This document shows, one piece after another, positions 18,917 through 42,356 of a stretch of 64,000 bases of DNA (the first letter of the stretch is position 1; every line of letters begins with the position of its first letter). Below the pieces are notes generated by a model. It worked only from the letters and a program-made list of their open reading frames with translations, had not been told where the DNA came from and searched no databases. This DNA is from Cyanophora paradoxa CCMP329 (Eukaryota > Plantae > Glaucophyta). The stretch spans positions 1 to 64,000 of the forward strand of contig QPMI01000071.1 of assembly GCA_004431415.1 (NCBI GenBank), written 5' to 3'. The position numbers were made by a program, and so were the translations under genes.

Positions 18917-21900
18917 TCAGGTACGCGTCTTTGGCGGGCGACCGCGCCGCCGGGCAGGCTGGGCGCCGCGCCCGGCGCCGCCGCCGCGCGACGACGACGG
19001 AGACGAGGACGGCGTGGCAGGCGCCGGGAGGCCCAGCAGCTCCAGAACGCGCTCGGGGCCGGTTCGGATCTCGACCGTGCCGTTCCGTCCCTCGTACTCG
19101 ACGGGATAAAGTGACGAAGGAAAGCTCCACTCGCGCGGTCCGCCCTCCTGGCTCGGCGCCCACGCGCCGCCGAAGCGCTTCAGCACCACGAAGCGTGACT
19201 CGTACTCGCCGCTCGGCAGGTCGATCGTCTGGACGAGGCGCGCGAACCACACGCCGGGGAGCGGGCTCGCCGCGTGCGTCGCCAGCGCCGCCACCACCTG
19301 CCCCGCCGGGTACGGCGAGGCCGACCGCCAGTGCAGGTGGTAGAGGGGCGGCGCGGGGCCGGCGGCGGCGACGCCGACGGGGACGGGCTCCTGGGAGGCG
19401 CCGCCTCGGCGCCCGCGCGCGCGGCCGAGGCCACGCCGGCCGCGCGCGCCACGGAGGAGGCCGCGCGAGCAGTAGTGCTCGTGGGCCCGCGCCCCGGCCG
19501 AGTTCTTAAACTCCTTGCGGTGCGTCAGGGCGGCGGCGCGGGGGGGGCGGCGCGGGGCGGGGCGGCGCGACCTGCTCACCCGATCGCAGGGCGCGCAGTA
19601 CCTCTGCTCGGCGATGGCGAGCTCGCGCTCGAGGGTGTAGTCGGCGTCCCAAGCGCGCGGCCTGTCGGCCCCCGTCCGCCGCCGCTTGGCCTCTTCGCTC
19701 CCGTCGGACGCGCCGCTCCCGTCCTCGCCATCGTCCTCCGAGTACGAGCTGGAGCTCTCCGCGCCGCGCCCCGCGCGGAAACGCGCCGAGGCGGACGGAG
19801 GCGCGGTTGACGGCGCCGGCTCGTCGTCGGCGTGCTCCTCGGAGCCTCCACCGTCGTCCCGCCCCACCTCGGTCCCGCCGCCCAAGCTCCCGCCCGCCGT
19901 CGAGGGCGCGGGGGATCCGGACGGCGGCGGCGGCGGCGGCGGCAGCGCCGGTGCCGGCGGGAGTTCGAGGCGGGGCGGCGCCTCGGCCGCGGCGGCGCTC
20001 TCGCGGGCCCGGAGCCGGGCTTCGTCGTGCTTGACGGCGAGCTGCTCGAGGTACGCCACCGCCGCCGCCGCCGTGCGCGCCCGCGCCGAGTAATCGTAAT
20101 TTTGCGTCGCCGTCAGCACCGAGTGGCCCAGAAGCTTGGCTGCCGGCGCGCGGGTGGGGCGAGGGAGGCGAGGGGGCGGGGGCGCTTCGGCGTACCCGTC
20201 CCGTCGACGACGGCGGCCGCGGTGTCGCCGGAGATGCGGTTCGCCGCGGCCTCGTCGCGCACGTGCGTCGTGATGATGGCCCGCATCGCCTGCGCCGTCA
20301 CCGGTACCCCCGTCCACTTTTCCGTCACGCGCTTGACAAAGACGCTCCAGGCCGAGTCGGAGAGGGGCGCTCCCGAGGCGCTCGTGAAGAGCCAGCCCTC
20401 GTCCGCGCCCCCCGGCAGCGGCGGGAGGAGGAGGCGCCGGTACCGCTCGACGTACGAGGTGAGCGGCCGCTGCACAAACTCCGGGATCGGGTAGCTGATC
20501 GCCCCCGCAGTTTTCGCGGTCTTCGACGAGAGGACGGCCTCGCCCTGCCCGCGTCCGCCCGCATCTGGGTGAGCGTGATTGTCCACGCGCCGCCGTCCCG
20601 CCGCAGCGTGTGGCCGATCCTGCGGGGGCGCAGAGGGCAGGACGGGGCCCTCGCTCGGCGCGGGGCGACGGCGCGGCGCGGGGGTACGGCACCTGAGGCG
20701 GCGGACGATGCCGACGCGCGAGGGCGTGGAGACGAGGAGCGACAGGAGGACGCCCTCGCGGAGGGCGAGCGCCCTCTCGTACTCCAACGGCGCCCGCTCC
20801 GCCGCCTCGAGCGCATCCAGCCGCGCCGAGAGGAGCGCCTCGAACGGCACCCAGTTCGGTCCGCGCTGACGCCATTTCACGCCTTCGCGCTTCTCCTTTC
20901 TCAGCTGGGCGATCAGGTTCCGCAGCGGGCGCCCGTGGGGGCCCTCGGAGCCGGCGGCGGCGCCGGCCGTCCGCGCGTGGACAAAGGAGTGGGCCTGGAG
21001 GGCCGCCTGCGTGTACCCCGCCAAGGTGCCCGCCCGGACCCTGCGCTCGCCGCGGAGAAACGCGAGGAACCGCATCCACAGGTCGATAAAGTCGACGCGG
21101 GCGCCGGAGAAGAGGTCGAGCGTGAGAGCGCCGTCGATCTTCTCGCGGAGGGCGCAGTACCCCAGGAACCGGAGGAGCGTCGTCCGCTCGTTCGCCAGCG
21201 TCGTGGAGCGCTCGACGGCGGCGCCGGGGCGGTCGGGGTTGAGGAGGCGGGTGCGAAACTCTTCGTACGCGGCGAGCTGCGCCTTGAGCTCGCGCGACTG
21301 ATCCTCCTCGCGCAGGCCGTACGGGGCGCCCCGCTCTGCCGGCTCGTCGCCCGCGGGGCCTTCGTCCTCCTCCTCGCCGTGCTCGTCGGCCGGGGGTACG
21401 GGCGGCGGGGGCGGCGAGGCCCCCGCCTCGGCGGACCCCTCGGGATCGGCGCCGCCCGAGTCCGACTCGGACTCGTCCGGCTCGGCGGGGGCGGGCGCCG
21501 GCGGGGCGCGGGCGCGCTTGGGGGGTACAGGGTCCCCGGCGGCGCCGAGCACCACGCGCTCGGGGTCCACGAGGGCGTCCACGTCAAAGAGCGTCGCCCC
21601 GCCGTGGTCCATGCTCTCCAGCATCCGCCGGTACGCCAGCCGCTTCTCGGCGATGAATTTCCCGTTGTCCTTTGCGATCTGATCCGCCATAGGGCCCCCG
21701 GGGCGGAAGAAGTGGATGGAGCCCTGCTCGAGCTCGTCCGACCACGGAAAGCCCGTCGTCGCCTCGACGATCCCCACGTCCGCGATCCAGAGGACCCCTG
21801 CGCGGTGCGCGCGGCATGAGTTTGATCCCGTTACCCCCGCGGAATCGAACCGGGCCCCGCACAGATGCCGCATTGGAACCCGTCCCCCTGGAGGCGCCCA

Positions 21901-23313
21901 CCGGCCGTCTCCTCGCGGTACGCGTGCGCGGGAAAGGCCGCCTGGGCGGCGTAGAGCAACCTGGCGTCGCAGGGCGCGCCGAGGCTGTCCCAGTACCGCG
22001 TCGTCCTGCGGGGGCGGCGCGATCGCGAGTGGCGCAGAGGACGCGGGCTCGGGCGCGGGGGCGCGGGGCGCGGCGCCGTCGGACCTCGCGGCGCCGGAGA
22101 GCACGAGCAGCGTCCAGTGCCCGCCGCTGTTCGACGTCCGCTCCGCCCCGCGCCGCGCGATCGACGTCGAGACCGGGCAGAAGAGGGTACCCCCGCGCCA
22201 CGAACCCCAGGGCCTTGCGCTGACGCCGCTCCTCGCCCGCCGCAGCGTAGCGCCGAAGGAGGCTCGTCAGAATCTCCACCGGCATGGGGTACAGGGCCCG
22301 CACGCGCGCGTTCTTGGCGCGGTGGAGCAAGAGGCTCATCACGTTGGCGACGTGCGTGTCGGCGAGCCACTCGCGCGCGCCAAAGATACCGACCCTGGGT
22401 CCCGCAGGCGCCGGCGCGGGGGCCGCGGCGGCGACGGTGGCGGGGTCGGCGCCCTCTAGCACGAGCCGCTGGCGGCGAAAGTCGAGGTGGAGGTTCGGAT
22501 CCCGGCCGGGGAGATCCTTCAGGAGGCTTTCGACGGCGACGGCGCTGAGGAACGCCCAGCGGCGCGCCGAGCTCCGCGTTCGCTCCCCGTCGACCTCGGC
22601 GCCGATGCCGGCGTAGTAGGTGAGCGTCCTCGTGAGCATGCCGAAGCGCTCGCGCCCGACGCTGAGCGTCGTAACGTTCCAGCGGTGCGGGCCGCCCGAC
22701 GCGAGTTCCGGGAGGCGGCGCTCGATCTCCCGGCGGAGCGAGTTCGTGGCGCGCGAGGAGCCGTAGAGGAGCTCGGAGAGCGACGCCATGGGGACCCAGA
22801 GCTTCAGGTCCGGAGCCTCGATCCGGGTCGCCGGCAGGGCGTAGAGCCGCTCGCCGCCGACGCGCACGACGTGCAGGTCGTAGCGGGAGAGGGCGCACAG
22901 GCGGCGGCGCTCGTTGGCGGCGTAGAACGCGGTGGCAGCGGCGCGCTTCCGGGCCTCGTCGCTGTCCGCCACGCCTGGTCGACGACCTCGAGCACGTACC
23001 TCATCGACAAGAGGCGCGGCGGGTCCTCGGGCGTGTACTCGCCGCGCCGGACGGCCCCGAGGGTCTCCAGGAGGAGGATCGCGTGCTCGCTCGGCACGGG
23101 CCGCGCTGGGACGCCATAGCGCGCGGTGAGCACGTCCTGCACCTCGTCCTCGCCCTCGCCCTCGGCCAACGGCGGCTCGCCCAGGACGCGCGCGAGCTCG
23201 GCAGAGCAGACGGAGGGCCCGGCGTCGGACTTTAGCACCACGAGCTGCGTCCGCCCCCACGGCCCGTCGAACTCGATCAGCTCGTACGCGTCGTGGACCG
23301 TCTGGAAGTACAT
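18917..23313 (-). CDS. Spliced multidomain integrase: unknown N-terminal domain + Ulp1/C48-type cysteine protease + tyrosine recombinase + C2HC zinc finger
   Basis: Protease: REWLADTHV, GGHWTLLVL, RYWDSLG, QGDGFQCGI|WVLW. Recombinase: TPSRVG (R), SSKTAK (K), WLF, TAQAMRAI, T|AKLLGHS, TQNY (Y). Zn finger: CAPCDR|EFKNSAGARAHEHYC. GT-AG introns at 21798-21862, 20620-20692, 20140-20195 and 19514-19579 each restore a motif in frame. Confidence 0.85.
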
Positions 23314-24438: not shown

Positions 24439-26102
24439 GGACGTGTATTGAACGGCCTCTCCGAGTACTGCGTGCACCGGCGTCTGCGGGGCCAGGGGTA
24501 CAGATTTTGGGGACCCTTGGACCCCTCTCCGGGGACCTAGGGTTCGTTTTGAAACGAGGTCCGGGATCCGCACTAGCAATTTATTCGCGCTCTCCGGGCC
24601 CTCCCCAGCCCCTGCGATGCGTTTGTGCGGGGCCGACTTTTTGTTTAACGGGGTATTCGACGGTCCCTCAATCTGTATTGGACCTTTTGGTTTTTAATTT
24701 TTAGTTTCTTTGATGCACCTTGGCTCGGCACCTCGCTCGGGGTTTGTGTTTCTATGATACTAGGACACGATATTCGCACTCGGTGCCCTGCGTTTCCAAT
24801 ATTTCGGTTTTCGAGCCCTCGGTCCCGCCCATACATGGGAGGGGTCGGTCTCCCGTACCCCGTCCCAGACCCTCCCCCCGCCTCGAGCATCACGTACGGG
24901 AGTGCCCCACCCGTAGAATTCATTTTCAAGCGGGGATTGGGAGGTTTTGGGGGTCAAGGGCCGGGGCTCATGATCACCCCGACGCCACCGCCTCGACCTT
25001 GTCCTCGCGACGGATGCGCCTCCGGAGCTGTATATCTTTGGGCTGGATCGTCACGCTGCGGCGTAGGCGCGCGTCTAGCGCGTCAGGTCGGGCATCGGGC
25101 ACGCGATCGCGGGACATTCAACTTATAATATTAATTAGGGTATCAATGATGATTATTTGGGCGCACCGCTTTGCATGAATGGCCATCAAATTGCCGTCCT
25201 CAAAGGTCTCGATCGCGTGCCTGCGCGCGGGGGGCCGGGGTGGGATGCATATGATTACGTTAATTAGATGTGGGAATTTAGTATGATCATGAGACTTACG
25301 CCTCGGCGGCCTCACGCAGGGCGAGAATCGAGTCCTTTGACCAGCGGATCCCAAACGGGACGTTGGACTCGCCCGTGTTGCGCCGTTCCTTGAGTTGATC
25401 GTCCGTGATCTCCTTGACGAGTCGCAGAAACGGACCGAGCGCGATGATAGGCTGCGTCGACTGCGTTATATGTACATGTTAGTATATCAATATCTATACC
25501 ATAGTATCATGTACGTTTCCGCATACGTAACTTAGTAAGGAAATTGAATGATTATATATAACGTACCTTTTGCCACTTGCGAATTTCCCTGAGAGCCACC
25601 GTGCCCTGAATTTCGAAATCATAGTCGCCGATTCACCAACTCAATGAGTAAGCTTAAGCTTTAAGCTTACTATTAAGAAACGTGTACCGGGCGATAGCGA
25701 TGAGGTTTCTTCACCCCACCGGCCGCGGGAGCGTTCTTTCTCGCGCTCTTGGACGACGACTTCAGAGAGGCGAAGCGCTTGCGCGGGGCCTTGTGTCCGG
25801 TCCCCTTCTTAGACCCTTGCGCGTGTTTCGTGCGCGCCATCCGGGTCCGATCGTCCCGCGCGCGAGCGGCCTGCGAGAGTCGATCGCGTGGGCGTCTAGG
25901 GTGCGGCCCTCGTGGGGGGATCCGGAGGCCTAGGCCTAGAATTAGGGGCCGGGGGGTTCACGGGGGTACTCAGAGGCCCAGCGAGATGCCGCTGCGCTCA
26001 TCTCGCGAACAAACGATTTTCCGGATGTATTTGTGCATCCCGCGAGACCGAAGAGGGGGTACATGGGAATGTACATGCCTAGCTATAGGTTTAATAATAT
26101 AA

Positions 26103-26438
26103 TTAGAACTCGTCGGCGAAGCGCTTCGGCGGGCCGACGAGGCGGAGGGGGGCGCGGGGCTTGAAGCCGGCCTTGATGCATTCCGCCGCGTAGACTTCGT
26201 AGGTAAAGCTGTTCAGCGCGTCGCACACGAGGGCGTCGAGCTCCGGATCGCTGGGGAGGCCGCACGCCGTAATGTCCTCGGGCGTCCAGAGCTTGGCAGA
26301 GGGGCGCGTCTCGGACGTGGGCTTGATCTCGACGGCGGGGTCCGTGCTCGAGCTCGTCGGCGTCGCGACTGCATCGCGATCGGCGAGGGGCGTCGCGCGC
26401 GACGGCGGGCTCGCGTCGGTGTACACGTTGGCGTCCAT
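26103..26438 (-). CDS. Hypothetical 111-aa protein
   Basis: ACCATGG start context, normal composition (LWTPEDITACGLPSDPELDALVCDAL), AT-rich 3' tract. Confidence 0.55.
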   Translation of the reverse strand: MDANVYTDASPPSRATPLADRDAVATPTSSSTDPAVEIKPTSETRPSAKLWTPEDITACGLPSDPELDALVCDALNSFTYEVYAAECIKAGFKPRAPLRLVGPPKRFADEF

Positions 26439-26621
26439 GGTGGCTGGAATTCAACGATCGCGAGGAGATTTAGAGAAAGAGGAATGGTGGTCCGGGCCTT
26501 CCCTGCGGGGTCCCGCCCGCGCAGAATCCCTCGCGGATTCGAGCGAAAGCAGCAATTTCACTATCTTGTATTCAGACGAAACCAGGCTCGAGCGCACGGA
26601 TACACGAATCGAGGATGCAGC

Positions 26622-28554
26622 TCACGCGGCCTCGGCGTGATCGTTGGGGGCCGACGTCGACCCGCCGCCGCCGCCATCCGAGCTCGAGCTCGCGCCGTCC
26701 GCCTTGAGCCGAAACACCGCCGCCGGCATCCGAACCAGGGCCGCCCCGTTCTCGCCCTTGTACGAGGCGACGCGCTCCTGGAGCCGCTGCTCGAGCGCGG
26801 CGACGGCCTCGGCGGGGGCCCGCTGGAGGAGCGGGAGGTAGGCGATAAAGTCGTGCGGGCTGACGCCATCGCCGACGACGCGCGCAAGGCCGGGGAGCCG
26901 CTGCAGGACGCGTGCGCAGGAGCAGAGGTCGGCGTAGACCTTGGCGCACGCCGCCCGGTCCTCGAGGCGCAGGCCGCACGCCTCGAGGATCGGCGAGTAC
27001 TTTGGCTCCACGCTGTCCTTGCGGAAGAGGCCCCAGCTCCTCGGGTTCCGCCCGTTGGCCTCCCGGAAGCGCTCGAACGCGCCGAGGATGCCGGAGCTGA
27101 CGAGGAGGAGGCACCGGATCCGCTCGCGACCCGCGTGCTGCGCGCGGGCGTAGAGGGCCCGCCGGGCGCCGGCGTCGGCGTCGAGCTGGATCCCCACCAG
27201 GGCCGCGTCGACCTGCGGGCGGGGCGGGCATGAGGTGAGGCCGGGGGAGGGGTCGAGATGGAGGGCGTACCCCCGCCGGAGGCCGCGCTCGAGCTCGGCG
27301 AGGGCCGCCGCGCCCTCGTCCTCCTCCTGGGCGGGCGCACCCTCCTCCCCGGCCCCTCGTCGCCCCCGCCCCGCTCCGAGCCCGAGTCGGACGAGGAGGA
27401 GAGCTCCTCCATCGCCCCCTCGAACGCCGCCCGCCGCTCCTCCTCCCACGTCTCCATCGGGTCCGCCTCGCCCTGCGCGCCGGGCGCGCCCTCCTCGGAG
27501 CCGGCGTCGGCGTCGTCGTCGTCGTCGTACTCGGAGAGCCTGCACGTGTACGCCTGGTAGAGGAGCTTGGCGAGCTTCTCGCTCTCCCACGGCGGCCGCC
27601 GCTCGGCCGGCTGCCGCCGCGCCCGCTTGGCGAGGGGCCCCGGGCCCGCGGCGGCGGCGCCCTTGCTGGCGTCTCCGTCCTCGAGCTCGTCCTCTTGCTC
27701 GCGCTCGGCGGCGGCGGAGGCCGCGCGGGCGGGGGCGACGCGCCGCGGCGGGCGGCGCGGCGGCTCCGGATCCGATTCCGCAGAGGCCGCCGCGGCGGGG
27801 GTGGGCTCCGGGGGGGCCGGAGCCGCCCTGGGAATCTCAGCGGGCGCCGGCGCCGAGGAGGACGAGGCCCCCGCGCCGTCGCAGAGGGCGAGGGCGGGGC
27901 GCGCCTCCGGGGCCGACGGGCGCGCCGCCGACGGGCGGTTCGCGAGGTAGACGGCGTGCTGGGCGGCCTGGGAGACGCTCGCCGCGCCGGCCCAGGACTC
28001 GGGGCGCTCGGCCTCGTGGACAAAGGCGCGGTAGGCAAGGTAGCCGTCGACGCGCGACGAGGGGACGAGGGCGGCGAGCGTGGGGTGCGGCTCGCGGCAC
28101 GCCCCCTGCGCCATGGGGCACTCGACCTCGCCCTCGGCGTCTCCGGCGGCGTCGGCGCAGCGAAGGGCCTGCGCGCGCGGCGACGGGGTGAGCGGGGCGG
28201 TCAGGGGGGGTAAGGCGGGGGTACCGGTACCTTGGGGACGCAGGCGAGGCACGCGAGGCCGTGGTGTCCGATGAGGCGGCCCGCCCGCTCGTCGTTGAGG
28301 TCGATCGCGCGGTCGAGGTCGCCGCCGCCGGCGAGCTCGACGATGCTCGCCGCGAGGCACGCCGGGACGTAGGCCGGAGGGTGGAGCCGCTGCGAGCGGC
28401 AGACGGAGCATTGTGGGCGTAGGTCGAGTTCGAGCCACGCCGAGATGTACTTGGGCCGCGAGACCCGCGCGCCGCGCGTATCCAGCGGCGGGGCGGCGCC
28501 GGCGGACCCCGCGGCGGGCTCGGCCCGCTCCTTACCCTTAGCTCCCGTACCCAT
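26622..28554 (-). CDS. Spliced RING-like zinc-finger protein with acidic linker and helical C-terminal domain
   Basis: CSVC...PAC...GHHGLACLACVPK|ALRC...VECPMAQGAC joined across a GT-AG intron at 28169-28230 (CTGAC branch site). A second intron is possible at ~27212-27270, and a probable 1-nt indel at ~27390. Confidence 0.65.
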
Positions 28555-28681
28555 GCAGGCCCGGACGCGATCGCCGCTCGTCCACGAGTGGCCCCCGCGG
28601 GCCGCGGGACGCTCTCCTTTACGAATCGCAGCGGGCCGGCGGACAAGGCGGAGGCCCGAGGCGGGGAGCAAACGCAGGAGA

Positions 28682-29465
28682 GGTGCGCCTACCCCCGCCG
28701 CCCGTCACGGAGCCAAGTCAGTTCCCTCTAGGGCGGCGCCGGCGGCGGGCGAGGGACTTACCTCGCGCCGCCGGGGGTACGAAGGAAAGCGATGCGGGCC
28801 TACCCCCGCCGCCCGTCACGGAGCCGAGTCAGTTCCCTCTAGGGCGGCGCCGGCGGCGGGCGAAGAGCTCACCGCGCCGCCGGGGGTACGAAGGAAAGAG
28901 ACACGGGCCTACCCCCGCCGCCCGTCACGGAGCCGAGTCAGTTCCCTCTAGCGCGGCGCCGGCGGGGGGCGAAGAGCTCACCGCGCCGCCGGGGGAACGA
29001 AGGAAACAGACACGGGCCTACCCCCGCCGCCCGTCACGGAGCCGAGTCAGTTCCCTCTAGCGCGGCGCCGGCGGGGGGCGAAGAGCTCACCGCGCCGCCG
29101 GGGAACGAAGGAAACAGACACGGGCCTACCCCGCCGCCCGTCACGGAGCCGAGTCAGTTCCCTCTAGGGCGGCGCCGGCGGCGGGCGAAGAGCTTACCGC
29201 GCCGCCGGGGGTACGAAGGAAAGCGATGCGGGCCTACCCCTGCCGCCCGTCACGGAGCCGAGTCAGTTCCCTCTAGGAGGGCGCCGGCGTCGGGCGAGGG
29301 GCGTGTACCGCGCCGCGGGGGGTACGAAGGAAAGAGATGCTGGTGGAGGGAGAGGACCGGCCGCGTCCTAGGGAGAATCGCCGCCGCTCCGTGACGGCCG
29401 AGGGGGGTACGGACGGCGCCACGGCCGCCCCGCCCTAGACGAACGCGCCGCCGCTCCGTGACGGC
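28682..29465. repeat. Repeat module 3 (inverted relative to modules 1 and 2): 6 B units + 2 A-like units
   Basis: CCGTCACGGAGCCGAGTCAGTTCCCTCTAG on the + strand, the reverse complement of module 1 B units. Confidence 0.9.
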
Positions 29466-29679
29466 CTTCAAAGGCCGCCGCAGCAGACTTCGTGACGTGA
29501 GCGGCTCTCGGCGACCCATAGGGCGGCGGAAATACGACGCGTGCGCGTCCCGCGCGCGCCTTCCGTGCCCGCCGCGCGAGCCGTGCGGGCGGGACTCCGG
29601 GACTCGAGCGGCGCCCCGCGCCCTCTGCCCGATAAAAGGGCGGTACCCCAGCGCCGGTCACGTGCACGCATCCGCTCCC

Positions 29680-29898
29680 ATGTCGCAGGAGACGGCCCGG
29701 ACGCTCGCCCACCGCCTCGCCCGCGAGCTCCCCCGGCAAGCTCCGATCCTCGTCGCCGTCCCCGACCCCGCCTTTTTCTTGCACGCGATCCACCTTCTCG
29801 AGGCCAACACCAGAGACCTGTTCGCGGACTTTAAAATAAGCTACAAAGCGACTTTGGACGGGCGCTGGGGCGTACAGATGGTCCCGCTCGATTTTTAG
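29680..29898 (+). CDS. Hypothetical 72-aa protein, paralog of the 158-aa ORF N-terminus
   Basis: GATAAAAG box ~45 nt upstream; 13/61 gapless identities with the 158-aa ORF. Confidence 0.6.
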   Translation: MSQETARTLAHRLARELPRQAPILVAVPDPAFFLHAIHLLEANTRDLFADFKISYKATLDGRWGVQMVPLDF

Positions 29899-30219
29899 AT
29901 AGGAGGCGTGTGTTGATTGGAAACCGAGACCGCGCGCCCGGCGGAGGGGCCGACTGCACGAGTGGGGGTGAGCGCGGGTCCCGGGTGGCGTCGTGCGGGG
30001 GGCACGCACCGCCCGAACCGGGTTTCTATGGCGCCGCCGCGCGCGCGAAAGTCCCCCGCGCCCGCCGTTGCACTCGAAGCGAGTGTACCCCCGCTTCCGC
30101 TGCATGTAAAGCGAGTGTAAGTGACCGAAAGGTGGCCGCGAAGGCGCGCTTACAATGTGCGGGCAGGTCTCATCGAAGCAGGTGAGGAAGACGCGCGCCG
30201 CGAGAGGCGTACCCCTGCC

Positions 30220-30920
30220 GCCCCGCCCTAGACGGAATCGCCGCCGCTCCGTGACGGCCGAGGGGGGTACAGGCGGCGCCGCGTCCGCCCCGCCCTAGAC
30301 GAACGCGCCGCGGCTCCGTGACGGCCGAGGGGGGTACGGGCAGCGCCGCGGCCGCCCCGCCCTAGACGAACACGCCGCGGCTCCGTGACGGCCGAGGGGG
30401 TACGGGCGGCGCCGCAGCCGCCCCGCCCTAGACGAACACGCCGCGGCTCCGTGACGGCCGAGGGGGTACGGGCGGCGCCGCGGCCGCCCCGCCCTAGACG
30501 AACGCGCCGCGGCTCCGTGACGGCCGAGGGGGTACGGGTGGCGGAGGGCGGCGGAGGGCTCTGTCCTCTTTCCTTCGTACCCCTCGAGCTCGGTGGGCTC
30601 CTCCATCTGCGCGGGCGGGGATGAGAGTTGTACTTGTTATCTAATTGGCTTTTTATATATATCTTAGTGACAACTTCAGGGGATTTGGGCAGCACGAGGG
30701 GCTTACCGCGCCGCCGGGGTACGAAGGAAAGAGACACGGGCCTACCCCCGCCGCCCGTCACGGAGCCGAGTCAGTTCCCTCTAGGGCGGCGCCGGAGTCG
30801 GGCGAGGGGCGTACCGCGTTGCCGGGGGTACGAAGGAAAGAGACGCGAGCCTACCCCCGCCGCCCGTCACGGAGCCGAGTCAGTTCCCTCTAGGGCGGCG
30901 CCGGCGTCGGGCGAGGGGCT
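30220..30920. repeat. Repeat module 4 (inverted): 5 A units, TATA core, 2 B units
   Basis: CCCTAGAC at 30226, 30293, 30360, 30426, 30492; reverse-complement core TTGGCTTTTTATATATATCTTAGT at ~30645. Confidence 0.9.
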
Positions 30921-31204
30921 TACCTTGGGGCGATGCGGCCCGCATCCCTCTATCCCCATAAAGAGAAGCCGCGACTCGTCCCCCGCGGGGTGTGGATGGA
31001 CGAAGACCGGCGCCCCCCCACGCCGGCGCCGCTTTCATCGTACCCGCCGCCGCCGCCCGCCGGGGCGCTCAGACCCGTGCCCCTCGGGCTGCCGCCCGCC
31101 GCGAGCTTCTCGAAGCGGGCGAGGCGCGCGCTACCTCCGGCCGAGCCGCCTGCGGAACGGGGATCAGACGTGTAAAGAGGACCGGGGCGCGGGACTCGGT
31201 AGCA

Positions 31205-31303
31205 ATGGATTCCGAGGCACCTACCAAGGCCAAAGAGGACGCACACATCGCGGCGGGCGCGGCCGCAAACTCGGACCCCGAAGACGAGGCGACCAAGGGA
31301 CCT

Positions 31304-31334
<31 letters not shown>

Positions 31335-31732
31335 GTAAGGCGCGGCCGTTCCACGCGAGCTTCGAGGGACAGCACGTGGCGTACCTCCTGCACAACGGCC
31401 GCACGTGGTACACCGGCGAGACGGCGAACCTGACGCGGCGGTACAAGGAGCACACGCGCGGCACGATCCGCGGATCGTACACCAAAGGCAAAGGGCCCTG
31501 GCGCCTCGTGGCAGTTGCGGCGCCCTTTTCCAACCGCAGCGTCGCGCAAGGCTTCGAGACGACGCTCAAGGGCAAGTCGGGCGGCCAGGCGAAGCGCCTC
31601 GAGGCGATGCGCAAGCTGGCGACCGAGTACTCGGCGCCGGGCGCGCCGATCGCGGTGCACGTCAACCCGGATCTCTCGGATAGCGAAAGCGAGGGCTCTC
31701 CTGCGAGGGCAGACCGTAGGGGCGTCAGCTAG
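31205..31732 (+). CDS. GIY-YIG endonuclease, SLX1-like
   Basis: VAYLLHNGRTWYTGETANLTRRYKEHTRG...SYTKGKGPWRLV...FSNRSVAQGFE. Confidence 0.9.
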
Positions 31733-31977
31733 GCCGGGGATCGAGCTCGGCCCGTCCACGGGCTCGCACGCATGGTAGAGCGATCTGATGCTGCACGTAC
31801 CTCGCGATCAACTCGAGCACCTGATCCGCGTTTGCTCGCCTCGCGGGAGGGACCGTGGGCTCCTCGGTGTGCAAGCACGGCGCGCTAAAGTAGGACGCGT
31901 ACCGGGGTACCCCCGAACGCGCTTCGTGCGGCGATCCGAGGCGCTCTGTGCCTCGAAATCAACCAAAGCGCATTCCC

Positions 31978-32687
31978 TTAGGGCGTCAAAGGCTGTCCTT
32001 TCCGCTCAATCGCCTCGGCGCCCAAGTACGAGGGCTCGAAGCGGCGGAACGTGCACCCTCGAGTGCGCGGGTGTTCCTCGTGCGCCATGTTCGAGCTGTT
32101 TCGCGCATTCATGGCCCCGAGGCGAGACGCCGGCCGCGCCCGCGGCGATGCCGAAAGGGATGTCGGCCCCCGCGGCGACCGCGGCGGCGGCGACGACGGC
32201 GGGGCTCCTTCCCGAGCTCTCGTGCCTCTCCTGAGCCCGCCGCCCTCCGCCTTTGGCACCCGCCCGCTCTCTGATCGACTCAACATAGTCCGCCGGCCGC
32301 GGTACGTGAGCACCGCCCGTCCGCGCTGGATCGCCCGCACAAACCTCACGAGCTTGCCGCGTCGCCCTCGCAGGTCGTGATGCCAGCCTACCGCGGGCAC
32401 CCAAGGGCGACGTACGCGTCGACGGCGACCGCGCGCGGCCATCTCGCACGAGCGCCCGCTCCAGAGCTTGCGGTCGGCCAGCAGGCGGCGCACATCGTCC
32501 AGCGCGTTCTCGGAGAGCGCCGTCGCGTCGGCCGCGGTGCGCAGAACATCTTTAAGCCGCGCTGAGGTTCGTCCCGTTGCCCGCGCTTCGATGGCGATCC
32601 GGCGTCGATCGCCGCTTCACCGCGCGCCCCGCAGGCATCGCAGACGGCGCCCTCGCACGACCAAAGGATCATCCCTCCGGGGCACAT
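31978..32687 (-). CDS. Possible hypothetical protein (frameshifted), N-terminal Cys pairs
   Basis: Two overlapping ORFs (CEGAVCDAC...; VGWHHDLRG...LVRFVRAIQRG); no recognisable family. Confidence 0.2.
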
Positions 32688-32699
32688 CGGCGGCGGCTG

Positions 32700-33447
32700 C
32701 GATTCGTACCCCCGTGCGTACCGTACCCCGCGCAGGAGGTGAGCTCCTCGCCCAACGCATGCGCCGCCCTAGAGAAAACTGACGCGGGTCCGTGACAGTG
32801 CGCGGCGGGGGTAGGCCCGTGTCTCGTTCCTTTGTACCCCCGAGGAACGGTAAGCTTCTTCATGTCGCCTCAATACCTTGTGGTTGTCACGATCGCGAGA
32901 TGACGAGTACAACTCCCATCCCCGCCCGCGCAGATGGAGGAGCCCACCGAGCTCGAGGGGTACGAAGGAAAGAGGACGGAGCCCACCGCCGCCCTCCGCC
33001 ACCCGTACCCCCCTCGGCCGTCACGGAGCGGCGGCGCCTCCGTCTAGGGCGGGGCGGCCGCGGCGCCGCGCGTACCCCCCTCGGCCGTCACGGAGCGGCG
33101 GCGCGTTCGTCTAGGGCGGGGCGGCCGCGGCGCCGCCCGTACCCCCCTCGGCCGTCACGGAGCCGCGGCGTGTTCGTCTAGGGCGGGGCGGCTGCGGCGC
33201 CGCCCGTACCCCCCTCGGCCGTCATGGAGCCGCGGCGTGTTCGTCTAGGGCGGGGCGGCCGCGGCGCCGCGCGTACCCCTCTCGGCCGTCACGGAGCGGC
33301 GTCGATTCCGTCTAGGGCGGGGCGGCCGCGGCGCCGCGCGTACCCCCCTCGGCCGTCACGGAGCGGCGGCGCCTCCGTCTAGGGCGGGGCGGCCGCGGCG
33401 CCGCCCGTACCCCCCTCGGCCGTCACGGAGCGGCGGCGCTTCCGTCT
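32700..33447. repeat. Repeat module 5: 1 B unit, core lacking the TATA, 7 A units
   Basis: TCTAGGGC recurs at ~67-bp period from 33043 to 33378, plus a terminal variant. Confidence 0.9.
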
Positions 33448-33696
33448 TTATGTTATTTTAATCCTTCTATTTCTAGACGAGTACTCCGTGTATAACTACG
33501 TGTGCCGTAGTACCGTAGGGCTTCCCGTGATCACAGTGCACACGCGCGCGCGGCCGCGATGCGGCCCGTGGAGGCTTCGAATTCGCATGCGGCGGTAGCT
33601 GAGGCAAACCACGAGCCCTCCGTGACAAGTCTCCTTTCGCGCGTGCACTTCAAAATTCGGTAAAACCATCGATATCAAATAATGAACTATCTATAA

Positions 33697-36600
33697 CTAG
33701 ATCTGCATCGCGTCGGCTTCGGTTCCGGGGGCGGGAATGCAATCCGGAGCGGGGGGCGCGGTGACCGCTTCGAATTCGGGGATGGGAGCCGGCGCCGGTG
33801 CCGGCGCGGGCGGCGGGGCGGGGCCATCGAGGCCCCCGCCCAACCAGTCGATCTCCAGGTAAATACTCGGGAAAAAGTGCCCGTGAAGGCGCTTCTCCTT
33901 TCCGTCGATTTTTACGCGCTGCTGGGATCCCTTGTACGTGTTGGAGCGGAGGACGCGAGGGGCCCGCGGCCCGAGTCCCTCCTCGAGCGCGTCCAAGAGT
34001 TCCGTCGCCAGCGGGCTGTGGTCCTTGCCGAGGGCGCGCCCGTCGGCGAGGACGATGTGCTTGTTCGCGTCGGCCATCGCGGAAAAGCTCACCCACGCGC
34101 CGCCGACCCGCACGTGCTCGACCTTGCATGCCTCGGCGTGCTCTCCGCGCGCGCAGCCCGTCTCGGGCCCGCAGAGGGGCCGGATTTCGACTTCTTGCTC
34201 CATCATCTCCCAGAAACCGCCATTCTTGCGATCGGGCCCGGCGATGCACGCCTCGACCGCGCGCATCATTGAAACGACGCAGGCGATGCGGTGCTCCTCG
34301 CGCCGGTCGATGCCCGTCGGCGTGTAGCGCGGATCTCCCTGCAAACCGCGGCCCGCGATCTCGGCGATCGACGGCGTGTCCAACGGCGCACCGATTCGAC
34401 GGAGAAAGTCCTCCGGAATGGTGAGAGCGGCCGCCAGTTTGGACTTGGACACGCACTCCAGGAACCGACGGGCGCCCTCGGCCGTCGAGTAGTCGAGGGC
34501 GGCGTACTGGGGCACGTATTCGCTGCCCTCGGCCGGGCCCGGAATGGCCGTCCAGTAGAGGAGATCTTTGATTTCGTCTTCCGTATCGGGTGCCCAGAGA
34601 GGGTGCGCGATCTGGCGCAGCTGCTGTGGGACGAGGGCGGAAGGATGAAGGTCGGGGACTTTTCCGCCGCCCCTCATGCATCGCAAGGCCGCCGCAACGG
34701 CCGAATTGGCCGAGAGGTACGCGCGCACGTCGGACTCGTACTGCTCGCTCGTGTCGGGGCTGCCGTTGCGAGTCTGGGGCTTCAGGGCGACGGCGAGGCG
34801 GGCGGCGTCGGCCACGTTTCCGGGCGGGTTGATGCGAAACTCGACAGGGGAGCCGTCGGGGGCCTTGCCCCGCGCGATACACGGGCTCGCCACCTTTACG
34901 AGTTTTCCGCCGAGTGATTCGATCGCGTAGGCGACGGCGCTCCGGTACACACGGTACAGGCAGGAATCCAGGCGCCGAGAGAGAGTGGCGCGGTCCTCTG
35001 CGGTCCGAGCCTTTTTCGACGGCCTCTCTTCGCCTTCGGACCCTTTTCCACCGTCTTCGTCGGTGTCGGAAGCCGCCATCTTGATCGCTTCAGATTCGGC
35101 ATCTTCGAGGGCCTCCTCCTCGGGGCGGCGCTCGGAGGGGAGCCTTTTAGAACCGCTGGCGAGAGAGGCCTCGAACTCCTCGACAACGGCTTTGATCGCG
35201 CCGTCCGAGGCTCCCGTGTCGCCGCGAAGGGCGAGCGCCCTCGCCAGAAGAGGGCCTTCGACGATCTTTAGGTCGACGAGGGCGGGGCTCGCGGCGAGGC
35301 GGGCGAGTCCCGCCGCCTTGACATCGTCGATCGAACCGAAGGCGATGGTCGGCAGGTGAAAATTGAAGGGGTGGAGCGGATGGAGCGGGTGCAACTCGGG
35401 GACGCCGAGCGTTGCCAAGATCATCTCCGTGCTCTTCTTCACCCTCGTGAAGGGATTGCAGGCGGACCCGGACGAGTTCGAAGCGACGTTATCGATGTCG
35501 CACTTGGCCTCGCGCGCCGCGTACGTGGGCTCGTCGACCTGGGTGAGGTAGATGCCGAGGCGCGCGCGCCTACGCATCGACTCGATTGTCTTGCTGGCCA
35601 TAAAGTCCTCCGGAGTTGTCGCGTAGAGCGGCTGCCCAAGCGTCATCGAGACCTGAGCCTTGTTTAAAACCGCCTGGATGGCCGACTCGTACTCCTCGGT
35701 CGCATCATCCTGCGATATGCCGAACTCTTCGCCGAGAGAATTACCGCTCCCATTTCGATCGTCGCCGGACTTGGAGACGAAACGCACAAAATCCCCGTGG
35801 AAGCGGCAGTCGAAGGAGATGCCGGGGGTGGTAGCCAACAAATTCGGGGCGTACTCTTGAGATTTGTAGACGGCGTCCCCGGTCCGTCCCACCTCGGCCA
35901 CCAAGGATTTGAATTCTTTCGCATCCAACGACACCCGTTCGAGGAGGTCCCCGTGGTTCGCGATGTAGACGCGCTGCGCGCCGAGATGGCACATCAACTT
36001 CTCCACGAGCATCCGATCGGGCCAGGTGTGATGCGCATTCCGCTCGGCGGTCACGTTTGCGTACACCATGGCGAGCAGGCGCTCCTCCTCAACATATTCG
36101 CGCCATCGCCGTTCGAAAGACTCGTCGTCCTCGTTGCGCTCGCGCTGAAAAAGGTCGGAGCGACCCTTTTCCAACTCGGCCAGGCGTCCCGCCCAGGCGG
36201 ACGAAAAGATGGCGTTCGGGTCCACGGGAAGGGTGGCCTCCTTGTCCGCGTCCGAGAAACGCTGGCAGTACATGTTGAGACGTACGTGGTTCGCCGAAGG
36301 AAGCTCTTCCAGATGCCGCACGCGGTTGTTCGCCTGGACCTCGCGATCCGTCCCTCCAGTCCGCCCAGCGTCCGTCATGAGCCTGAACTTGGGCCGGAAC
36401 ACGTGCCCGTCGAAGCCGACTTGAACGACGTAGTTGGCCATGATCACATCCTTCGTATTCCATTTCTCGGCGTCGTTCAGGTCGCGTCGCCGCTCGGCGG
36501 GGCAGTCGGCGAAGCCCAAAAGGACCCGCTTTTCGGTAAATTGCGGGTTCAACGCGGCCATAACGGCGAAGTTCCGGAACATGTGCTGCTTGTCGGCGTG

Positions 36601-39600
36601 CAGGTTTGACGTTCGTATCACCGGTCGTCCCTTTGCGCTCTTTGTAGCCGGTTTCGGAAGGCATGCCGCGGAGAAGAAGGGGCTCCAGGCGATGGGCACG
36701 ACAACGTGGACCTCTTCGCGGTAGCGAGCGAGGGACTCGGGGCTCGAGAGTTGGAAGACGACCATCGTCTCGCCGGGCGGTACCTGGGACGCGAGAACTT
36801 CGAGGTGCCAAGGCTGCAAATCCTGGCACATCGCGATGACCGACTTGCTCCGTCGCATCGCACGGAGGAGTCTCTTCCACGATTTCTTCCGGATGCCGTT
36901 GAACGTCTCGGAGCTCGAAAAGCGACCGAGCAAGCAGTTAAGCTCGTCCGCAATGAGAATCCCGCGCCGCGAGTCGATGTTCTTGACGTTTTCAGCCTTG
37001 TGAAAGCTCTCCGCGCACACGACGATGCGATCGTGCATCAATCGCTTTTTCTTGTCCCGTCTGCTCTTCTCCTTGGCATTTCCGGCACCGTCCCGGTAAC
37101 CTCGGAAGCGCTGCGCGTGAAGGGGGCTGTTCTCGTCAACCTCGCCTTGCGCGCGTCCGTTTGCGATGTACGTAGCGTAGCGAGCCGTGGGCTCGGAGGC
37201 CGTGGCCGTCGATAAGAGTTGCGATTCGAGATAGTTGAGAAGTCCGTTCGGGTTGTCGGCGAGCACGGCGCGCGTCTTCTGCGCGCCGCATCCGGCTGCA
37301 ATCGCGATGGTGTGGGGAAGGGCCACCTTGGGGTCCGTTGAGGAGCGCAGCCGGGTCACCATCACGCCGTCGCCGAGGTGGGGAAGATCGTCGATCATGA
37401 TGACCTTGTAATTGCACGACGGGTGTAGATGCCGCGGTCTTGTCGCCTCCGGGATGAGGGGCTGGTCGATCGGGTGGCGAAAGATCCTGGGCGAGGCGGG
37501 CGCCACTGCGGGCGACGCGAAGGAGAGGTCGGGACGCGCGTCGGCCGAGTGACTGAGCATTGGCTCCAGAACGTTGGTTCGAATGGCATCCGAGACGGCC
37601 ATCAGCTGGTCTTTGACCGGGTTTTGAAAGAAAATGCTCCGCTTGAGCTCCATGCCACACGCTCCGGCCATGAAGCGGGCCGGACCTGACCCGACTTGGC
37701 GACGGAGATAAAGTGCGTCGTCGAACTTTGTAAACGCGGCCCGCAACGCGGCCGCGTCCACGCGAGAGAGGGACGCGTTGCACGTCTCCGTCTGATCTTG
37801 ACCGTTCAAGCTCTTGTAGCGGCACTTTACCCAGACTTTTCCGTCGAGAAGGCTGACGCAGGCCATGTGGTTCGTCTCGTCCTTCGAGCCGTAGTAGACG
37901 GCAATGACGAGGCGGTTTACCTTGGCCTCGAGCACCTCCCAGTACGGATGGATGACGTCGCGTTCCTCGGCGGGCGTTGCGCCGACGGCGTCGAGGCTCC
38001 GAGCGAGCTTGGGAAGCGGCGGAAGGTCGGACTCGTACACGCACGAGTGGAGCATGGCGTTGAGGGTTTCGAAGAAATTCTTCTCGAGCTCCACAATCTT
38101 TTCGCCCGGACCCCCGTATGCCGTCGTGGTGAAGTGGATCGCGTGGTTCAGCTCGCACTGAGAGCTCATACAACGGACGCTCGCCCGAAACACGCCAGGC
38201 ATGCCGTTTCCGCAAACGGTGACGAGGGCGCGGTTGGTCTTATGGTGGAGACCGTACGGACACTCGCCCTGCAACGCGTTGAGGGGATTCGGAACGGTCA
38301 CAAAGTTGAAGTAATTGATGGTTCGGCCGCTGTTGCACGTCTTGGCGTTGCGGCTCGTAAACGTAAGCGCCCGATGGCCGTCCGGGAAGAGCTTTTCGCA
38401 CACGCGAAACGCGACATCGAATGCCTCTTTGCACTCCGACGAGCCGCCGCCGACGTCGCTCCCAGCAATTGTAATCGACGGCACCGGTAGCGCGCTCGGT
38501 GGCTGGCCGTGGGAAGACTCGCCGACGCTCGGGATGGGATGGATTCGCTCGTAGTTCGCTGCGATATAGTCGTGAAGGCGACGGAGGTGCCCCGAGAACG
38601 CCTCGATCGCCCGTGGGTCGGGCGCCTCGCGAGGGATGGGAACATCGAGGAAATCTTTGTTGGGGTCGAGCGGTGGGTAGATCATCGCACAGTACGAGTT
38701 GCTCTTCGGGTTTCGCGCGTCCGGAAGGCGTAGACCTTGGCCGCGGCTCCAAACTCCCTCGTCGACATGACGCGAGATGCAGGCGATCTTCTCCTCGGAG
38801 AGCACCTTGAAAACCCGCGAGAACCGCGCCGAGATCTCGTTGCGAAGGCTAGACGCGCCCTCCGGATTGTCCAGACGAAGGCAAAAATGCTCAAAGTCGT
38901 CGTGAAAGACATGGGCCCCGCGGAAGCCCAGGACGACGAAGGGCTTACGGTCGGGACCGAAAGTCTTTGCGATCTCGACGGCGCACTCGACCACACGCTC
39001 CAGCGCGGCGCTACCGCGGATGTACTCGGCGTACGTGCGGCATTTGTCAAAGTGCTCCTTAAGGGACTTGAGCGCCGCGCCGTCGCCCATCCGGTGCGCG
39101 CTGCTCGACGATTTGAGAAGCTTCTCGCGTCCAGCGCACGCCTCGCTCAGGTCGGCGTCCACATCCACATAGGCGCGGCTGTACACGACGGTTTCGCGAC
39201 CGCCCGACGCCGCGATCACCTTGTAGTCGAAGGTGGACTTGAGGAACTTGCCGCGAAAATCATCTGCCTCCAGACGACGAGCGGAATGGAAGGCGAATTT
39301 TGGGCCAATGTACGGATTGTGGGGATTGTTTCCGACGGGCTTGACGAAGGCCTCGATTGTCGGCGGGGGAGAGGGCCAGGGCGGCTCGGCGCGCTCGGAG
39401 CCGGCGGCCTCTGGTGCGGCGAGCTCGAGCATGCGCGTGCCCGCGACGCACGCGTCCGCCATCTCGACATCGACGTCGCGATCGGCCGTCGAGATCGCCT
39501 TGGCCCCCGCCGCGGCCTCGCGATCGTGGTTCGCCGGCAACACCTCCATGCTCTTCGTTTGCGATATCGATATCGATTGTGCGCCGATTTCAGCGCCCCG

Positions 39601-39669
39601 TTCGCCTTTTCCAGCAGCAGGCGAGGGCGGAAGAATCGCACGAATTCGTGCGTCCGTCTCGACACTCAT
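33697..39669 (-). CDS. AEP (PrimPol/herpes-NCLDV type) primase + Zn finger + UL9/origin-binding-type SF2 helicase fusion, ~1990 aa, intronless
   Basis: AEP motifs: AYVDVDADL, LGFRGAHVF, VDEGVWSRGQGLRLP. Zn finger: CPYGLHHKTN...RCMSSQC. Helicase motifs: IAAGCGAQKT, VVCAESFHK, ILIADELNCLLGRF, SVIAMCQDL, WNTKDVIMANYVVQVGFD, QANNRVRHL. Start placed at MSVETD, ~70 nt downstream of a TATATAA box. Confidence 0.85.
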   Translation of the reverse strand: MSVETDARIRAILPPSPAAGKGERGAEIGAQSISISQTKSMEVLPANHDREAAAGAKAISTADRDVDVEMADACVAGTRMLELAAPEAAGSERAEPPWPSPPPTIEAFVKPVGNNPHNPYIGPKFAFHSARRLEADDFRGKFLKSTFDYKVIAASGGRETVVYSRAYVDVDADLSEACAGREKLLKSSSSAHRMGDGAALKSLKEHFDKCRTYAEYIRGSAALERVVECAVEIAKTFGPDRKPFVVLGFRGAHVFHDDFEHFCLRLDNPEGASSLRNEISARFSRVFKVLSEEKIACISRHVDEGVWSRGQGLRLPDARNPKSNSYCAMIYPPLDPNKDFLDVPIPREAPDPRAIEAFSGHLRRLHDYIAANYERIHPIPSVGESSHGQPPSALPVPSITIAGSDVGGGSSECKEAFDVAFRVCEKLFPDGHRALTFTSRNAKTCNSGRTINYFNFVTVPNPLNALQGECPYGLHHKTNRALVTVCGNGMPGVFRASVRCMSSQCELNHAIHFTTTAYGGPGEKIVELEKNFFETLNAMLHSCVYESDLPPLPKLARSLDAVGATPAEERDVIHPYWEVLEAKVNRLVIAVYYGSKDETNHMACVSLLDGKVWVKCRYKSLNGQDQTETCNASLSRVDAAALRAAFTKFDDALYLRRQVGSGPARFMAGACGMELKRSIFFQNPVKDQLMAVSDAIRTNVLEPMLSHSADARPDLSFASPAVAPASPRIFRHPIDQPLIPEATRPRHLHPSCNYKVIMIDDLPHLGDGVMVTRLRSSTDPKVALPHTIAIAAGCGAQKTRAVLADNPNGLLNYLESQLLSTATASEPTARYATYIANGRAQGEVDENSPLHAQRFRGYRDGAGNAKEKSRRDKKKRLMHDRIVVCAESFHKAENVKNIDSRRGILIADELNCLLGRFSSSETFNGIRKKSWKRLLRAMRRSKSVIAMCQDLQPWHLEVLASQVPPGETMVVFQLSSPESLARYREEVHVVVPIAWSPFFSAACLPKPATKSAKGRPVIRTSNLHADKQHMFRNFAVMAALNPQFTEKRVLLGFADCPAERRRDLNDAEKWNTKDVIMANYVVQVGFDGHVFRPKFRLMTDAGRTGGTDREVQANNRVRHLEELPSANHVRLNMYCQRFSDADKEATLPVDPNAIFSSAWAGRLAELEKGRSDLFQRERNEDDESFERRWREYVEEERLLAMVYANVTAERNAHHTWPDRMLVEKLMCHLGAQRVYIANHGDLLERVSLDAKEFKSLVAEVGRTGDAVYKSQEYAPNLLATTPGISFDCRFHGDFVRFVSKSGDDRNGSGNSLGEEFGISQDDATEEYESAIQAVLNKAQVSMTLGQPLYATTPEDFMASKTIESMRRRARLGIYLTQVDEPTYAAREAKCDIDNVASNSSGSACNPFTRVKKSTEMILATLGVPELHPLHPLHPFNFHLPTIAFGSIDDVKAAGLARLAASPALVDLKIVEGPLLARALALRGDTGASDGAIKAVVEEFEASLASGSKRLPSERRPEEEALEDAESEAIKMAASDTDEDGGKGSEGEERPSKKARTAEDRATLSRRLDSCLYRVYRSAVAYAIESLGGKLVKVASPCIARGKAPDGSPVEFRINPPGNVADAARLAVALKPQTRNGSPDTSEQYESDVRAYLSANSAVAAALRCMRGGGKVPDLHPSALVPQQLRQIAHPLWAPDTEDEIKDLLYWTAIPGPAEGSEYVPQYAALDYSTAEGARRFLECVSKSKLAAALTIPEDFLRRIGAPLDTPSIAEIAGRGLQGDPRYTPTGIDRREEHRIACVVSMMRAVEACIAGPDRKNGGFWEMMEQEVEIRPLCGPETGCARGEHAEACKVEHVRVGGAWVSFSAMADANKHIVLADGRALGKDHSPLATELLDALEEGLGPRAPRVLRSNTYKGSQQRVKIDGKEKRLHGHFFPSIYLEIDWLGGGLDGPAPPPAPAPAPAPIPEFEAVTAPPAPDCIPAPGTEADAMQI

Positions 39670-39724
39670 GTCCGAGGGCCGGGTACCGTCGACGTCCGGG
39701 GCCCGGACCTTCACGGCACGCCCC

Positions 39725-39782
39725 GGGCCCGTCTCCTTATATATGTGCCGGCCCCTCCCGGCACGTGCACGGCCCCACGGCC
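39725..39782. promoter_or_regulatory. Compact divergent promoter with TTATATAT box (copy 1 at ~5530-5586)
   Basis: CCTTATATATGTG is the only AT-rich patch in the ~113 nt between the helicase ATG (-, 39669) and the Cys-rich ORF ATG (+, 39783). Confidence 0.5.
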
Positions 39783-40223
39783 ATGACCATGGCCATGGCC
39801 CCTCCTCGAGCTCCCGAGCCCCGCGTCGGGGATCGCGTCCCCCGGCCCCTCCCCGCCCCCGCCCGGACCTGCCGGGCCTGCGGCGGAGCCGCTCCTCTCG
39901 TCCGCCGCAGTGCACTCTGCTGCGCCTGCCGAGCGCGGTACGAGCGCGAGCGCAGGAGGGCCGTGCGCGTGACCGCGGGGGGCCCCTGCCCCGCGGCCAG
40001 CGACGTCGACCCCCGCGTCGGACGCGTGCGCCGCATCTGCAAGCGATCCGACGGGCTCGTCGTCGCCTACTGCGGCCGCTGCCGAATCGTCTTACCCCTC
40101 CAGTCCTTCCAGATGGCGACTGAGGGCAGGTTTTACAAGCGGTGCCCAACGTGTCGGCGCGAGGACGATCGAGCTAGAGCGGCGAGGCTGAGGGGGCGCG
40201 CCGTCTTGGAGAAAATTGCATAA
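39783..40223 (+). CDS. Small Cys-rich zinc-ribbon protein (~146 aa)
   Basis: Paired cysteines CRAC, CCAC, CGRC, CPTC; ATG downstream of the TATA; stop followed by an AT-rich TAAATAGA. Confidence 0.55.
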   Translation: MTMAMAPPRAPEPRVGDRVPRPLPAPARTCRACGGAAPLVRRSALCCACRARYERERRRAVRVTAGGPCPAASDVDPRVGRVRRICKRSDGLVVAYCGRCRIVLPLQSFQMATEGRFYKRCPTCRREDDRARAARLRGRAVLEKIA

Positions 40224-40265
40224 ATAGATGCGAAACGCGGGAGCATTCGAGGTACCCACTGGGCC

Positions 40266-40936
40266 ATGACGCTCGAGCTCGTCCCGTACGACCCCAAGTG
40301 GGGCGCTGCCCGCTGCTGGCTCGCCGTCGAGCCCGAAGAGGATTCGAGCGTGCGGTACGAGGCGGTTGAGCAGCCGCTCGATGGGGACCCGGCGAGGGAT
40401 TTTCGCGCACGTCGTCAGCACGAACAGTTTGCGACGCTTTGCTTTGTGGCGTGGCGGTGCTTTCGCAATCGTTTCCGCGAGCCTCCTCGGGGAATCTGCG
40501 TTCCGGACGAGTGTCCCGTCTGTCTGGACCGCCTCTTGCGGCCCGTCGCCCTCTCCTGCGGACACGTAATGGATTTCCACTGCCTCGTACGCGTGCATCA
40601 CGCCACGTGCCCCTCTGCCGCGCCGCGGTCGAGCCAGACGGGATCTACGCGCTGACCGACGAGCACCGTCGCCGGGCGGCCTCGGAGGAGGGTTACGTCC
40701 AGCGGCTTCGCGAGGCCGCCTCGCCCGACGGCGATCTCGGCTGGATGGCCGATCGGATCCGGCGAAGGCTCGCGGACCCGTCTTGGATGGCGTGGGACTC
40801 GGCCGAAGAGCGCGAGAGGAAGGCGCGCCTGCAATTGTACAGAAACTGCGGCGCGTCGAGGGCTGCGGCCGGTATCGATGCTCCATTTTCGCAGAGAGCC
40901 TCGGCCGTGGCGGTCGGCGGCGCATGCGCAGGCTGA
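40266..40936 (+). CDS. RING-finger protein, copy 2 (1-nt deletion in a C-run at ~40610)
   Basis: Duplicate of 6066-6737. Confidence 0.8.
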
Positions 40937-42223: not shown

Positions 42224-42356
42224 GTCGCGTTGAAGTTCACGCGACGGGTGGTCCGGTGCAGTCGCGTTGAAGTTCACGCGACGGGTGGTGCTGTGCAGTC
42301 GCGTTGAAGTTCACGCGACGGGTGGTCCGGTGCAGTCGCGTTGAAGTTCACGCGAC
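42224..42356. repeat. 4 x 37-bp palindromic tandem repeat, copy 2
   Basis: Duplicate of 8028-8160. Confidence 0.9.

What the first reader, a model, noticed from the sequence alone, without database searches (positions are those of the whole stretch)
18917..23313. Tyrosine recombinase fused to a Ulp1-type protease and zinc finger, hidden by four introns
Seen: the ORF track shows only fragments, but removing four 56-73-nt GT-AG introns restores QCGIWVLW, IVRRLRIGHTL, DGTAKLLGHS and CDREFKN. Known: Ulp1/C48 domains are carried by some eukaryotic DNA transposons, and intron-bearing YRs typify Cryptons. Inference: this single-chain fusion could deSUMOylate chromatin at the recombination site, or process itself. 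I do not know of a described protein with this architecture.
Basis: partly seen in the sequence, partly recalled or inferred. Interest (0 to 1): 0.85.

Follow-up and report, generated by a model that had tools for sequence, protein, structure and literature searches.

The report
Recombinase with built-in ubiquitin-like protease
In the alga Cyanophora paradoxa, a repeated 34-kb mobile DNA element encodes a DNA-cutting-and-joining enzyme that carries, in the same chain, a protease of the kind that strips SUMO or ubiquitin tags, probably so the element can escape the host's tag-and-destroy control.

Summary
The gene is real, and its coordinates are exact (23313-18917, minus strand; second copy 57705-53309). 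The window is Cyanophora paradoxa nuclear DNA. A fifth intron (22006-22084) is needed, and copy 1 has three homopolymer frameshifts that copy 2 and database models from other contigs lack, most likely assembly errors. The product is about 1,350 aa: unknown N-terminal domain, clan-CE (Ulp1/C48-type) protease with His-Asp-Gln-Cys, tyrosine recombinase with R-K-x-R-H-Y, C2HC finger, unknown domain, AT-hook. Profiles and folds of paralogues match CE proteases and XerA/Cre. One stop-free exon runs from the protease's catalytic helix to the recombinase's first Arg, so the fusion does not rest on splicing guesses. The architecture recurs in diverged Cyanophora paralogues but was found nowhere else; 80 loci of the sister recombinase family lack the protease. 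The gene lies 1.4 kb from one end of a tandem 34.4-kb unit with a replication-protein-like ORF, a CENH3-like histone, and RING, AAA and GIY-YIG genes, and no capsid detected. Protease plus recombinase is known in oomycete Cryptons, and Ulp1 fused to DDE transposases is known. Substrate, expression and mobility are untested.

The parts
22085..23313 (-). Exon 1: N-terminal domain(s) of unknown function (about 280 aa) and first half of the protease, with catalytic His at 22117-22119. Copy 1 lacks 1 nt at 22965 and 2 nt at 22189 (homopolymer errors).
   Evidence: model of paralogue N-terminus
22006..22084 (-).
   Evidence: junction continuous in paralogues
21863..22005 (-). Exon 2: protease Asp (21987-21989), oxyanion Gln (21873-21875) and catalytic Cys (21870-21872)
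21798..21862 (-). Intron 2, 65 nt
20693..21797 (-). Exon 3 (367 codons, no stop): rest of the protease catalytic helix, acidic/proline linker, recombinase core-binding (SAM-like) domain and first catalytic Arg (20716-20718)
20620..20692 (-). Intron 3, 73 nt
20196..20619 (-). Exon 4: recombinase catalytic Lys (20521-20523) and second Arg (20281-20283; Gln in place of the usual His). Copy 1 lacks 1 nt at 20547.
   Evidence: (phrog_1 integrase E=0.023)
20140..20195 (-). Intron 4, 56 nt
19580..20139 (-). Exon 5: recombinase His (20123-20125) and Tyr nucleophile (20096-20098), low-complexity linker, first two Cys of the zinc finger
19514..19579 (-). Intron 5, 66 nt (65 in copy 2)
   Evidence: junction used by database model P0093
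18917..19513 (-). Exon 6: His and Cys of the C2HC finger, RGG-rich stretch, conserved domain of about 115 aa with no database match, terminal AT-hook-like motif, stop
53309..57705 (-). Second copy of the gene: no substitutions against copy 1, different homopolymer indels
24695..59066 (.). Inferred 34.4-kb repeat unit holding the gene. Both copies end on the same bases at 24694 and 59066, and the next 6 nt match at 5 of 6 positions. The left end of the array lies outside the window.
   Evidence: same gene order on tig411
33700..39549 (-). Intronless 1,950-aa ORF, probable primase-helicase replication protein
   Evidence: NCBIfam CyRepA1 E=1.7e-4 on residues 828-932; motifs by eye; no Pfam, PDB or phage hit
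24977..25840 (-). Five-exon histone H3 variant: H3-like tail, CENH3-like fold (no Gln68, long loop 1, Trp for Phe84, no Thr107)
   Evidence: (best PDB hits Cse4, E=0.003)
31205..31732 (+). GIY-YIG endonuclease
   Evidence: Pfam E=4.5e-8
40266..40936 (+). RING-finger ORF (intact in copy 1 at 6066-6737)
   Evidence: Pfam E=6.9e-7
44780..47990 (-). Multi-exon AAA+ ATPase gene (boundaries approximate)
   Evidence: (AAA E=0.018)
41900..43300 (.). Non-coding, more AT-rich stretch with 3.6 palindromic 37-nt repeats (42224-42358); origin-like (inference)

Best explanation
The gene encodes the integrase of a large, multi-copy, apparently capsid-less mobile element in the Cyanophora paradoxa nucleus. 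Shown: one open chain of about 1,350 aa holding a clan-CE cysteine protease and a Cre/Xer-fold tyrosine recombinase, both with their catalytic residues, at one end of a tandem 34.4-kb unit that recurs on another contig. Inferred step 1: the recombinase excises the unit as a circle and reintegrates it at a short target resembling its own end, and the element's replication protein or repeated integration gives head-to-tail arrays. Inferred step 2: the protease is an isopeptidase for a ubiquitin-like tag (SUMO most likely; ubiquitin or NEDD8 possible). Tethered to the recombinase, it removes tags at the recombination complex, from the recombinase itself, from its covalent DNA intermediate, or from nearby chromatin and repair proteins. 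This would counter the SUMO-ubiquitin-proteasome control that hosts apply to such enzymes. The zinc finger and AT-hook would hold it on chromatin.
For: Architecture. Protease: profile hits 9qte E=1.6e-8, XopD, SENP1 and Ulp1 with H, D, Q and C aligned; fold of a paralogue hits SnCE1-SUMO1, NEDP1, NopD-SUMO and Ulp1. Its triad is kept in paralogues 36-55% identical. Recombinase: model pLDDT 90.6, hits XerA and Cre with probability 1.0; profile hits XerA and Tn1549 Int. The His-position residue varies across the whole family (K, R, S, T, Q), so Gln is not a sign of death. Element: 34.4-kb duplication; the same gene order with a second replication-gene copy on tig411; the 5/6 match after the shared end fits the Crypton model of a terminus resembling its target (PMC9977147; PMC13465315). 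Precedent: yeast Flp is sumoylated, ubiquitinated by Slx5-Slx8 and degraded, and ulp1 mutation deregulates it (PMC6594588). Ulp1/OTU domains recur in transposases (PMC2836005) and C48 in Cryptons (PMC3212892).
Against: No transcript, protein or activity evidence; look-ups for encoding contigs found nothing. Repeats and virus-derived genes in C. paradoxa are mostly methylated and silent (PMC12344493). Only one end of the array is in the window, so terminal repeats and an empty site were not seen. The window's own exons score no significant Pfam hit; the domain calls rest on profiles and folds of paralogues. The folds do not say which tag is cut, and viral maturation proteases also match. In yeast, loss of Ulp1 also deregulates Flp, so deSUMOylation need not simply stabilise a recombinase.
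Confidence: 0.55

Rival explanations
1. The protease is a maturation enzyme that cuts the polyprotein itself (or other element proteins) after Gly-Gly, releasing a free recombinase, as viral clan-CE proteases do.
For: Adenain, poxvirus I7 and ASFV pS273R are among the fold matches. The linker between the domains is long, low in complexity and holds Gly-Gly pairs. Relatives of the recombinase sit beside virus-type genes.
Against: The best sequence and fold matches are ubiquitin-like isopeptidases. The Gly-Gly pairs are not conserved in position among paralogues and are expected in a GC-rich linker. No capsid or other polyprotein substrate was detected in the unit.
Confidence: 0.15
2. The element is a silenced relic: the gene is not expressed, the frameshifts are in part real, and the tandem copy may be a recent segmental duplication or an assembly duplication.
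For: Both window copies are frameshifted as assembled; they differ by only 13 substitutions in 24.7 kb; repeats are methylated in this species.
Against: The shifts differ between copies, lie in homopolymers and are absent from models on two other contigs. GC3 is 0.90-0.97 in every exon. All catalytic residues are present. tig411 carries a separate array about 1% diverged in protein.
Confidence: 0.13
3. The unit is a piece of an endogenous virus (Polinton-like virus or giant virus) whose capsid genes are too diverged to detect or lie elsewhere, and the protein is its integrase with a captured viral protease.
For: Sister recombinases lie next to an A32 packaging ATPase, D5 and SF3 primase-helicases and protelomerases. 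Endogenous PLVs are 15-30 kb with a tyrosine recombinase or rve integrase (PMC10120064). Giant-virus insertions are reported in C. paradoxa.
Against: No capsid, A32 ATPase or PolB among the coding segments of the unit. Several genes have spliceosomal introns, whereas endogenous PLVs are described as intron-free. No terminal inverted repeat at the one visible end. No relative in 2.9 million viral contigs. The closest non-Cyanophora protease lies in an AT-rich eukaryotic contig beside transposase-like ORFs.
Confidence: 0.12
4. Protease and recombinase are made as separate proteins by alternative splicing or an internal start.
For: Some database models hold only the N-terminal part (P0095-P0099). 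Oomycete CryptonS elements keep C48 in an additional protein.
Against: The helix after the catalytic Cys and the recombinase's first Arg lie in one stop-free exon, so neither domain is complete without it. Full-length fused models exist in diverged subfamilies (P0091, P0002, P0003, P0005).
Confidence: 0.05

Closest known systems
Oomycete Cryptons with C48 peptidase (CryptonF-2_PS, some CryptonS; Kojima and Jurka 2011, PMC3212892)
   Same: Eukaryotic DNA element with a tyrosine recombinase and a Ulp1-related C48 peptidase; short end/target similarity instead of inverted repeats.
   Different: There the peptidase is described as encoded 'in addition to' the recombinase or as an additional protein. 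Here it lies in the same chain, upstream of the recombinase. No GCR1_C, DUF3504 or other Crypton-type Pfam family was hit. Cryptons are simple elements; this unit is 34 kb with about ten genes and a replication-like protein.
Ginger1 and Mutator transposases with Ulp1 or OTU domains (PMC2836005)
   Same: A ubiquitin-like protease tied to a transposition enzyme; in Ginger1 it is a domain of the same chain, sometimes with a PHD finger, and the gene has introns.
   Different: Those are DDE transposases with the protease at the C-terminus, terminal inverted repeats and target duplications. Here the enzyme is a tyrosine recombinase and the protease precedes it.
Tyrosine-recombinase Polinton-like viruses and the undescribed environmental recombinase family found here (P0007-P0080, L006-L085)
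   Same: Nearest recombinase relatives (25-35% identity; shared PxRVG and KT motifs); element size; primase-helicase and GIY-YIG genes.
   Different: None of 80 loci carries the protease. The Cyanophora proteins form their own clade (99/99). No capsid or packaging ATPase was detected; the genes have introns.
Starships (fungal giant tyrosine-recombinase elements)
   Same: Large cargo-carrying eukaryotic element with an intron-containing recombinase near one end (own knowledge; PMC13465315 for the definition).
   Different: No DUF3435 hit; Starships are described from filamentous Dikarya; from my own knowledge they have no protease-fused captain.
Yeast 2-micron plasmid and Flp (PMC6594588)
   Same: Nuclear selfish DNA whose tyrosine recombinase is controlled by SUMO and ubiquitin; from my own knowledge its partitioning locus is a repeat array that recruits the centromeric histone. 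A functional analogy only.
   Different: 2-micron is a 6-kb episome using host Ulp1, host Cse4 and host replication. This unit is integrated and appears to encode its own protease, H3 variant and replication protein. No homology to Flp was shown.

Membership tests
Tyrosine recombinase superfamily | Core-binding plus catalytic domain of the Cre/Xer/Int fold | tested here: met
   Model of paralogue P0091:610-1000 (pLDDT 90.6) hits XerA E=4e-5 and Cre, probability 1.0; window exons 3 and 4 are 53% and 65% identical to it
Tyrosine recombinase superfamily | Catalytic R-K-H-R-H/W-Y | tested here: met
   R, K, R, H and Y present; the first His is Gln, a position that varies across the family
Tyrosine recombinase superfamily | Recombination activity on DNA | not testable with these tools
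   Needs an assay
Clan CE / C48 (Ulp1-like) protease | His-Asp-Cys triad with oxyanion Gln in the order H...D...QxxxxxC or QC, and the CE fold | tested here: met
   Profile and fold searches; residues in exons 1 and 2
Clan CE / C48 (Ulp1-like) protease | Pfam PF02902 above the gathering score | tested here: not met
   Paralogues score 14-16 bits against a cut-off of 20.7; window exons score nothing. A diverged member of the clan, not a canonical Ulp1
Clan CE / C48 (Ulp1-like) protease | SUMO specificity | not testable with these tools
   Matches include SUMO, NEDD8 and ubiquitin proteases
Crypton | Tyrosine recombinase without reverse transcriptase | tested here: met
   No RT among the coding segments scanned
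Crypton | Short (4-6 bp) direct repeats at both ends | tested here: inconclusive
   Only one end is in the window; 5 of 6 nt match after it
Crypton | Simple element, one or two genes; recombinase of the CryptonF/S/A/I groups (GCR1_C, DUF3504) | tested here: not met
   34-kb unit with about ten genes; no such Pfam family among 56 family members. No tree with Repbase Cryptons could be built
Polinton-like virus | [quoted passage not shown] | tested here: inconclusive
Polinton-like virus | Intron-free genes; terminal inverted repeats in many | tested here: not met
   Introns in the recombinase, histone and ATPase genes; no terminal repeat at the visible end
Starship | DUF3435 captain recombinase | tested here: not met
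C2H2-class zinc finger | C-x2-C-x12-H-x3-H/C pattern | tested here: inconclusive
   Pattern kept in the window gene, P0091 and P0005; Pfam E 0.026-0.064, below cut-offs

The most novel reading that the evidence does not exclude
The 34.4-kb unit is a new class of eukaryotic integrative, self-replicating (plasmid-like) element. It would copy itself with its own primase-helicase, integrate and amplify with a recombinase that removes its own SUMO/ubiquitin tags, and secure segregation by loading its own CENH3-like histone on arrays of a fixed-spacing bipartite site.
Probability: 0.2. Interest if true: 0.85.

Novelty: new variant of a known kind. Interest (0 to 1): 0.6.

Why it matters
Ulp1- and OTU-type proteases turn up again and again in eukaryotic transposons, and why they do has been conjecture since at least 2010 (PMC2836005). 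A single chain holding the protease and a site-specific recombinase allows a clean test: inactivate the protease and measure recombinase stability, tagging and recombination. It also adds an undescribed recombinase family and an undescribed large element in a glaucophyte, a lineage whose repeats are largely unclassified (11.5% unknown repeats, PMC6704402). The pairing itself has precedent, so the surprise is moderate unless the whole element proves to be self-replicating.

Tried and rejected
Exon-by-exon Pfam and NCBIfam scans and PDB sequence searches of window exons gave nothing significant; PHROGs gave only a weak integrase hit. rDNA or tRNA array as the cause of the 34-kb repeat: rejected, no Rfam or tRNA hit. 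Viral-contig scans with exon 3, an environmental relative, the family alignment and the replication protein found no relatives; two alignments were too variable to scan. Encoding-contig look-ups for Cyanophora proteins found none, so I have no DNA of other copies and no transcript evidence. The idea that the protease was inserted between an ancestral N-terminal domain and the recombinase: not supported, profile comparison of N-termini E=0.15 and 0.09. The N-terminal and C-terminal domains remain unnamed (only a weak fold match to a Bro protein, E=0.01). The repeated bipartite site as the recombination target: considered, but it does not occur at the unit junction. The 1,950-aa protein has no homologue outside this genome in one word-based search.
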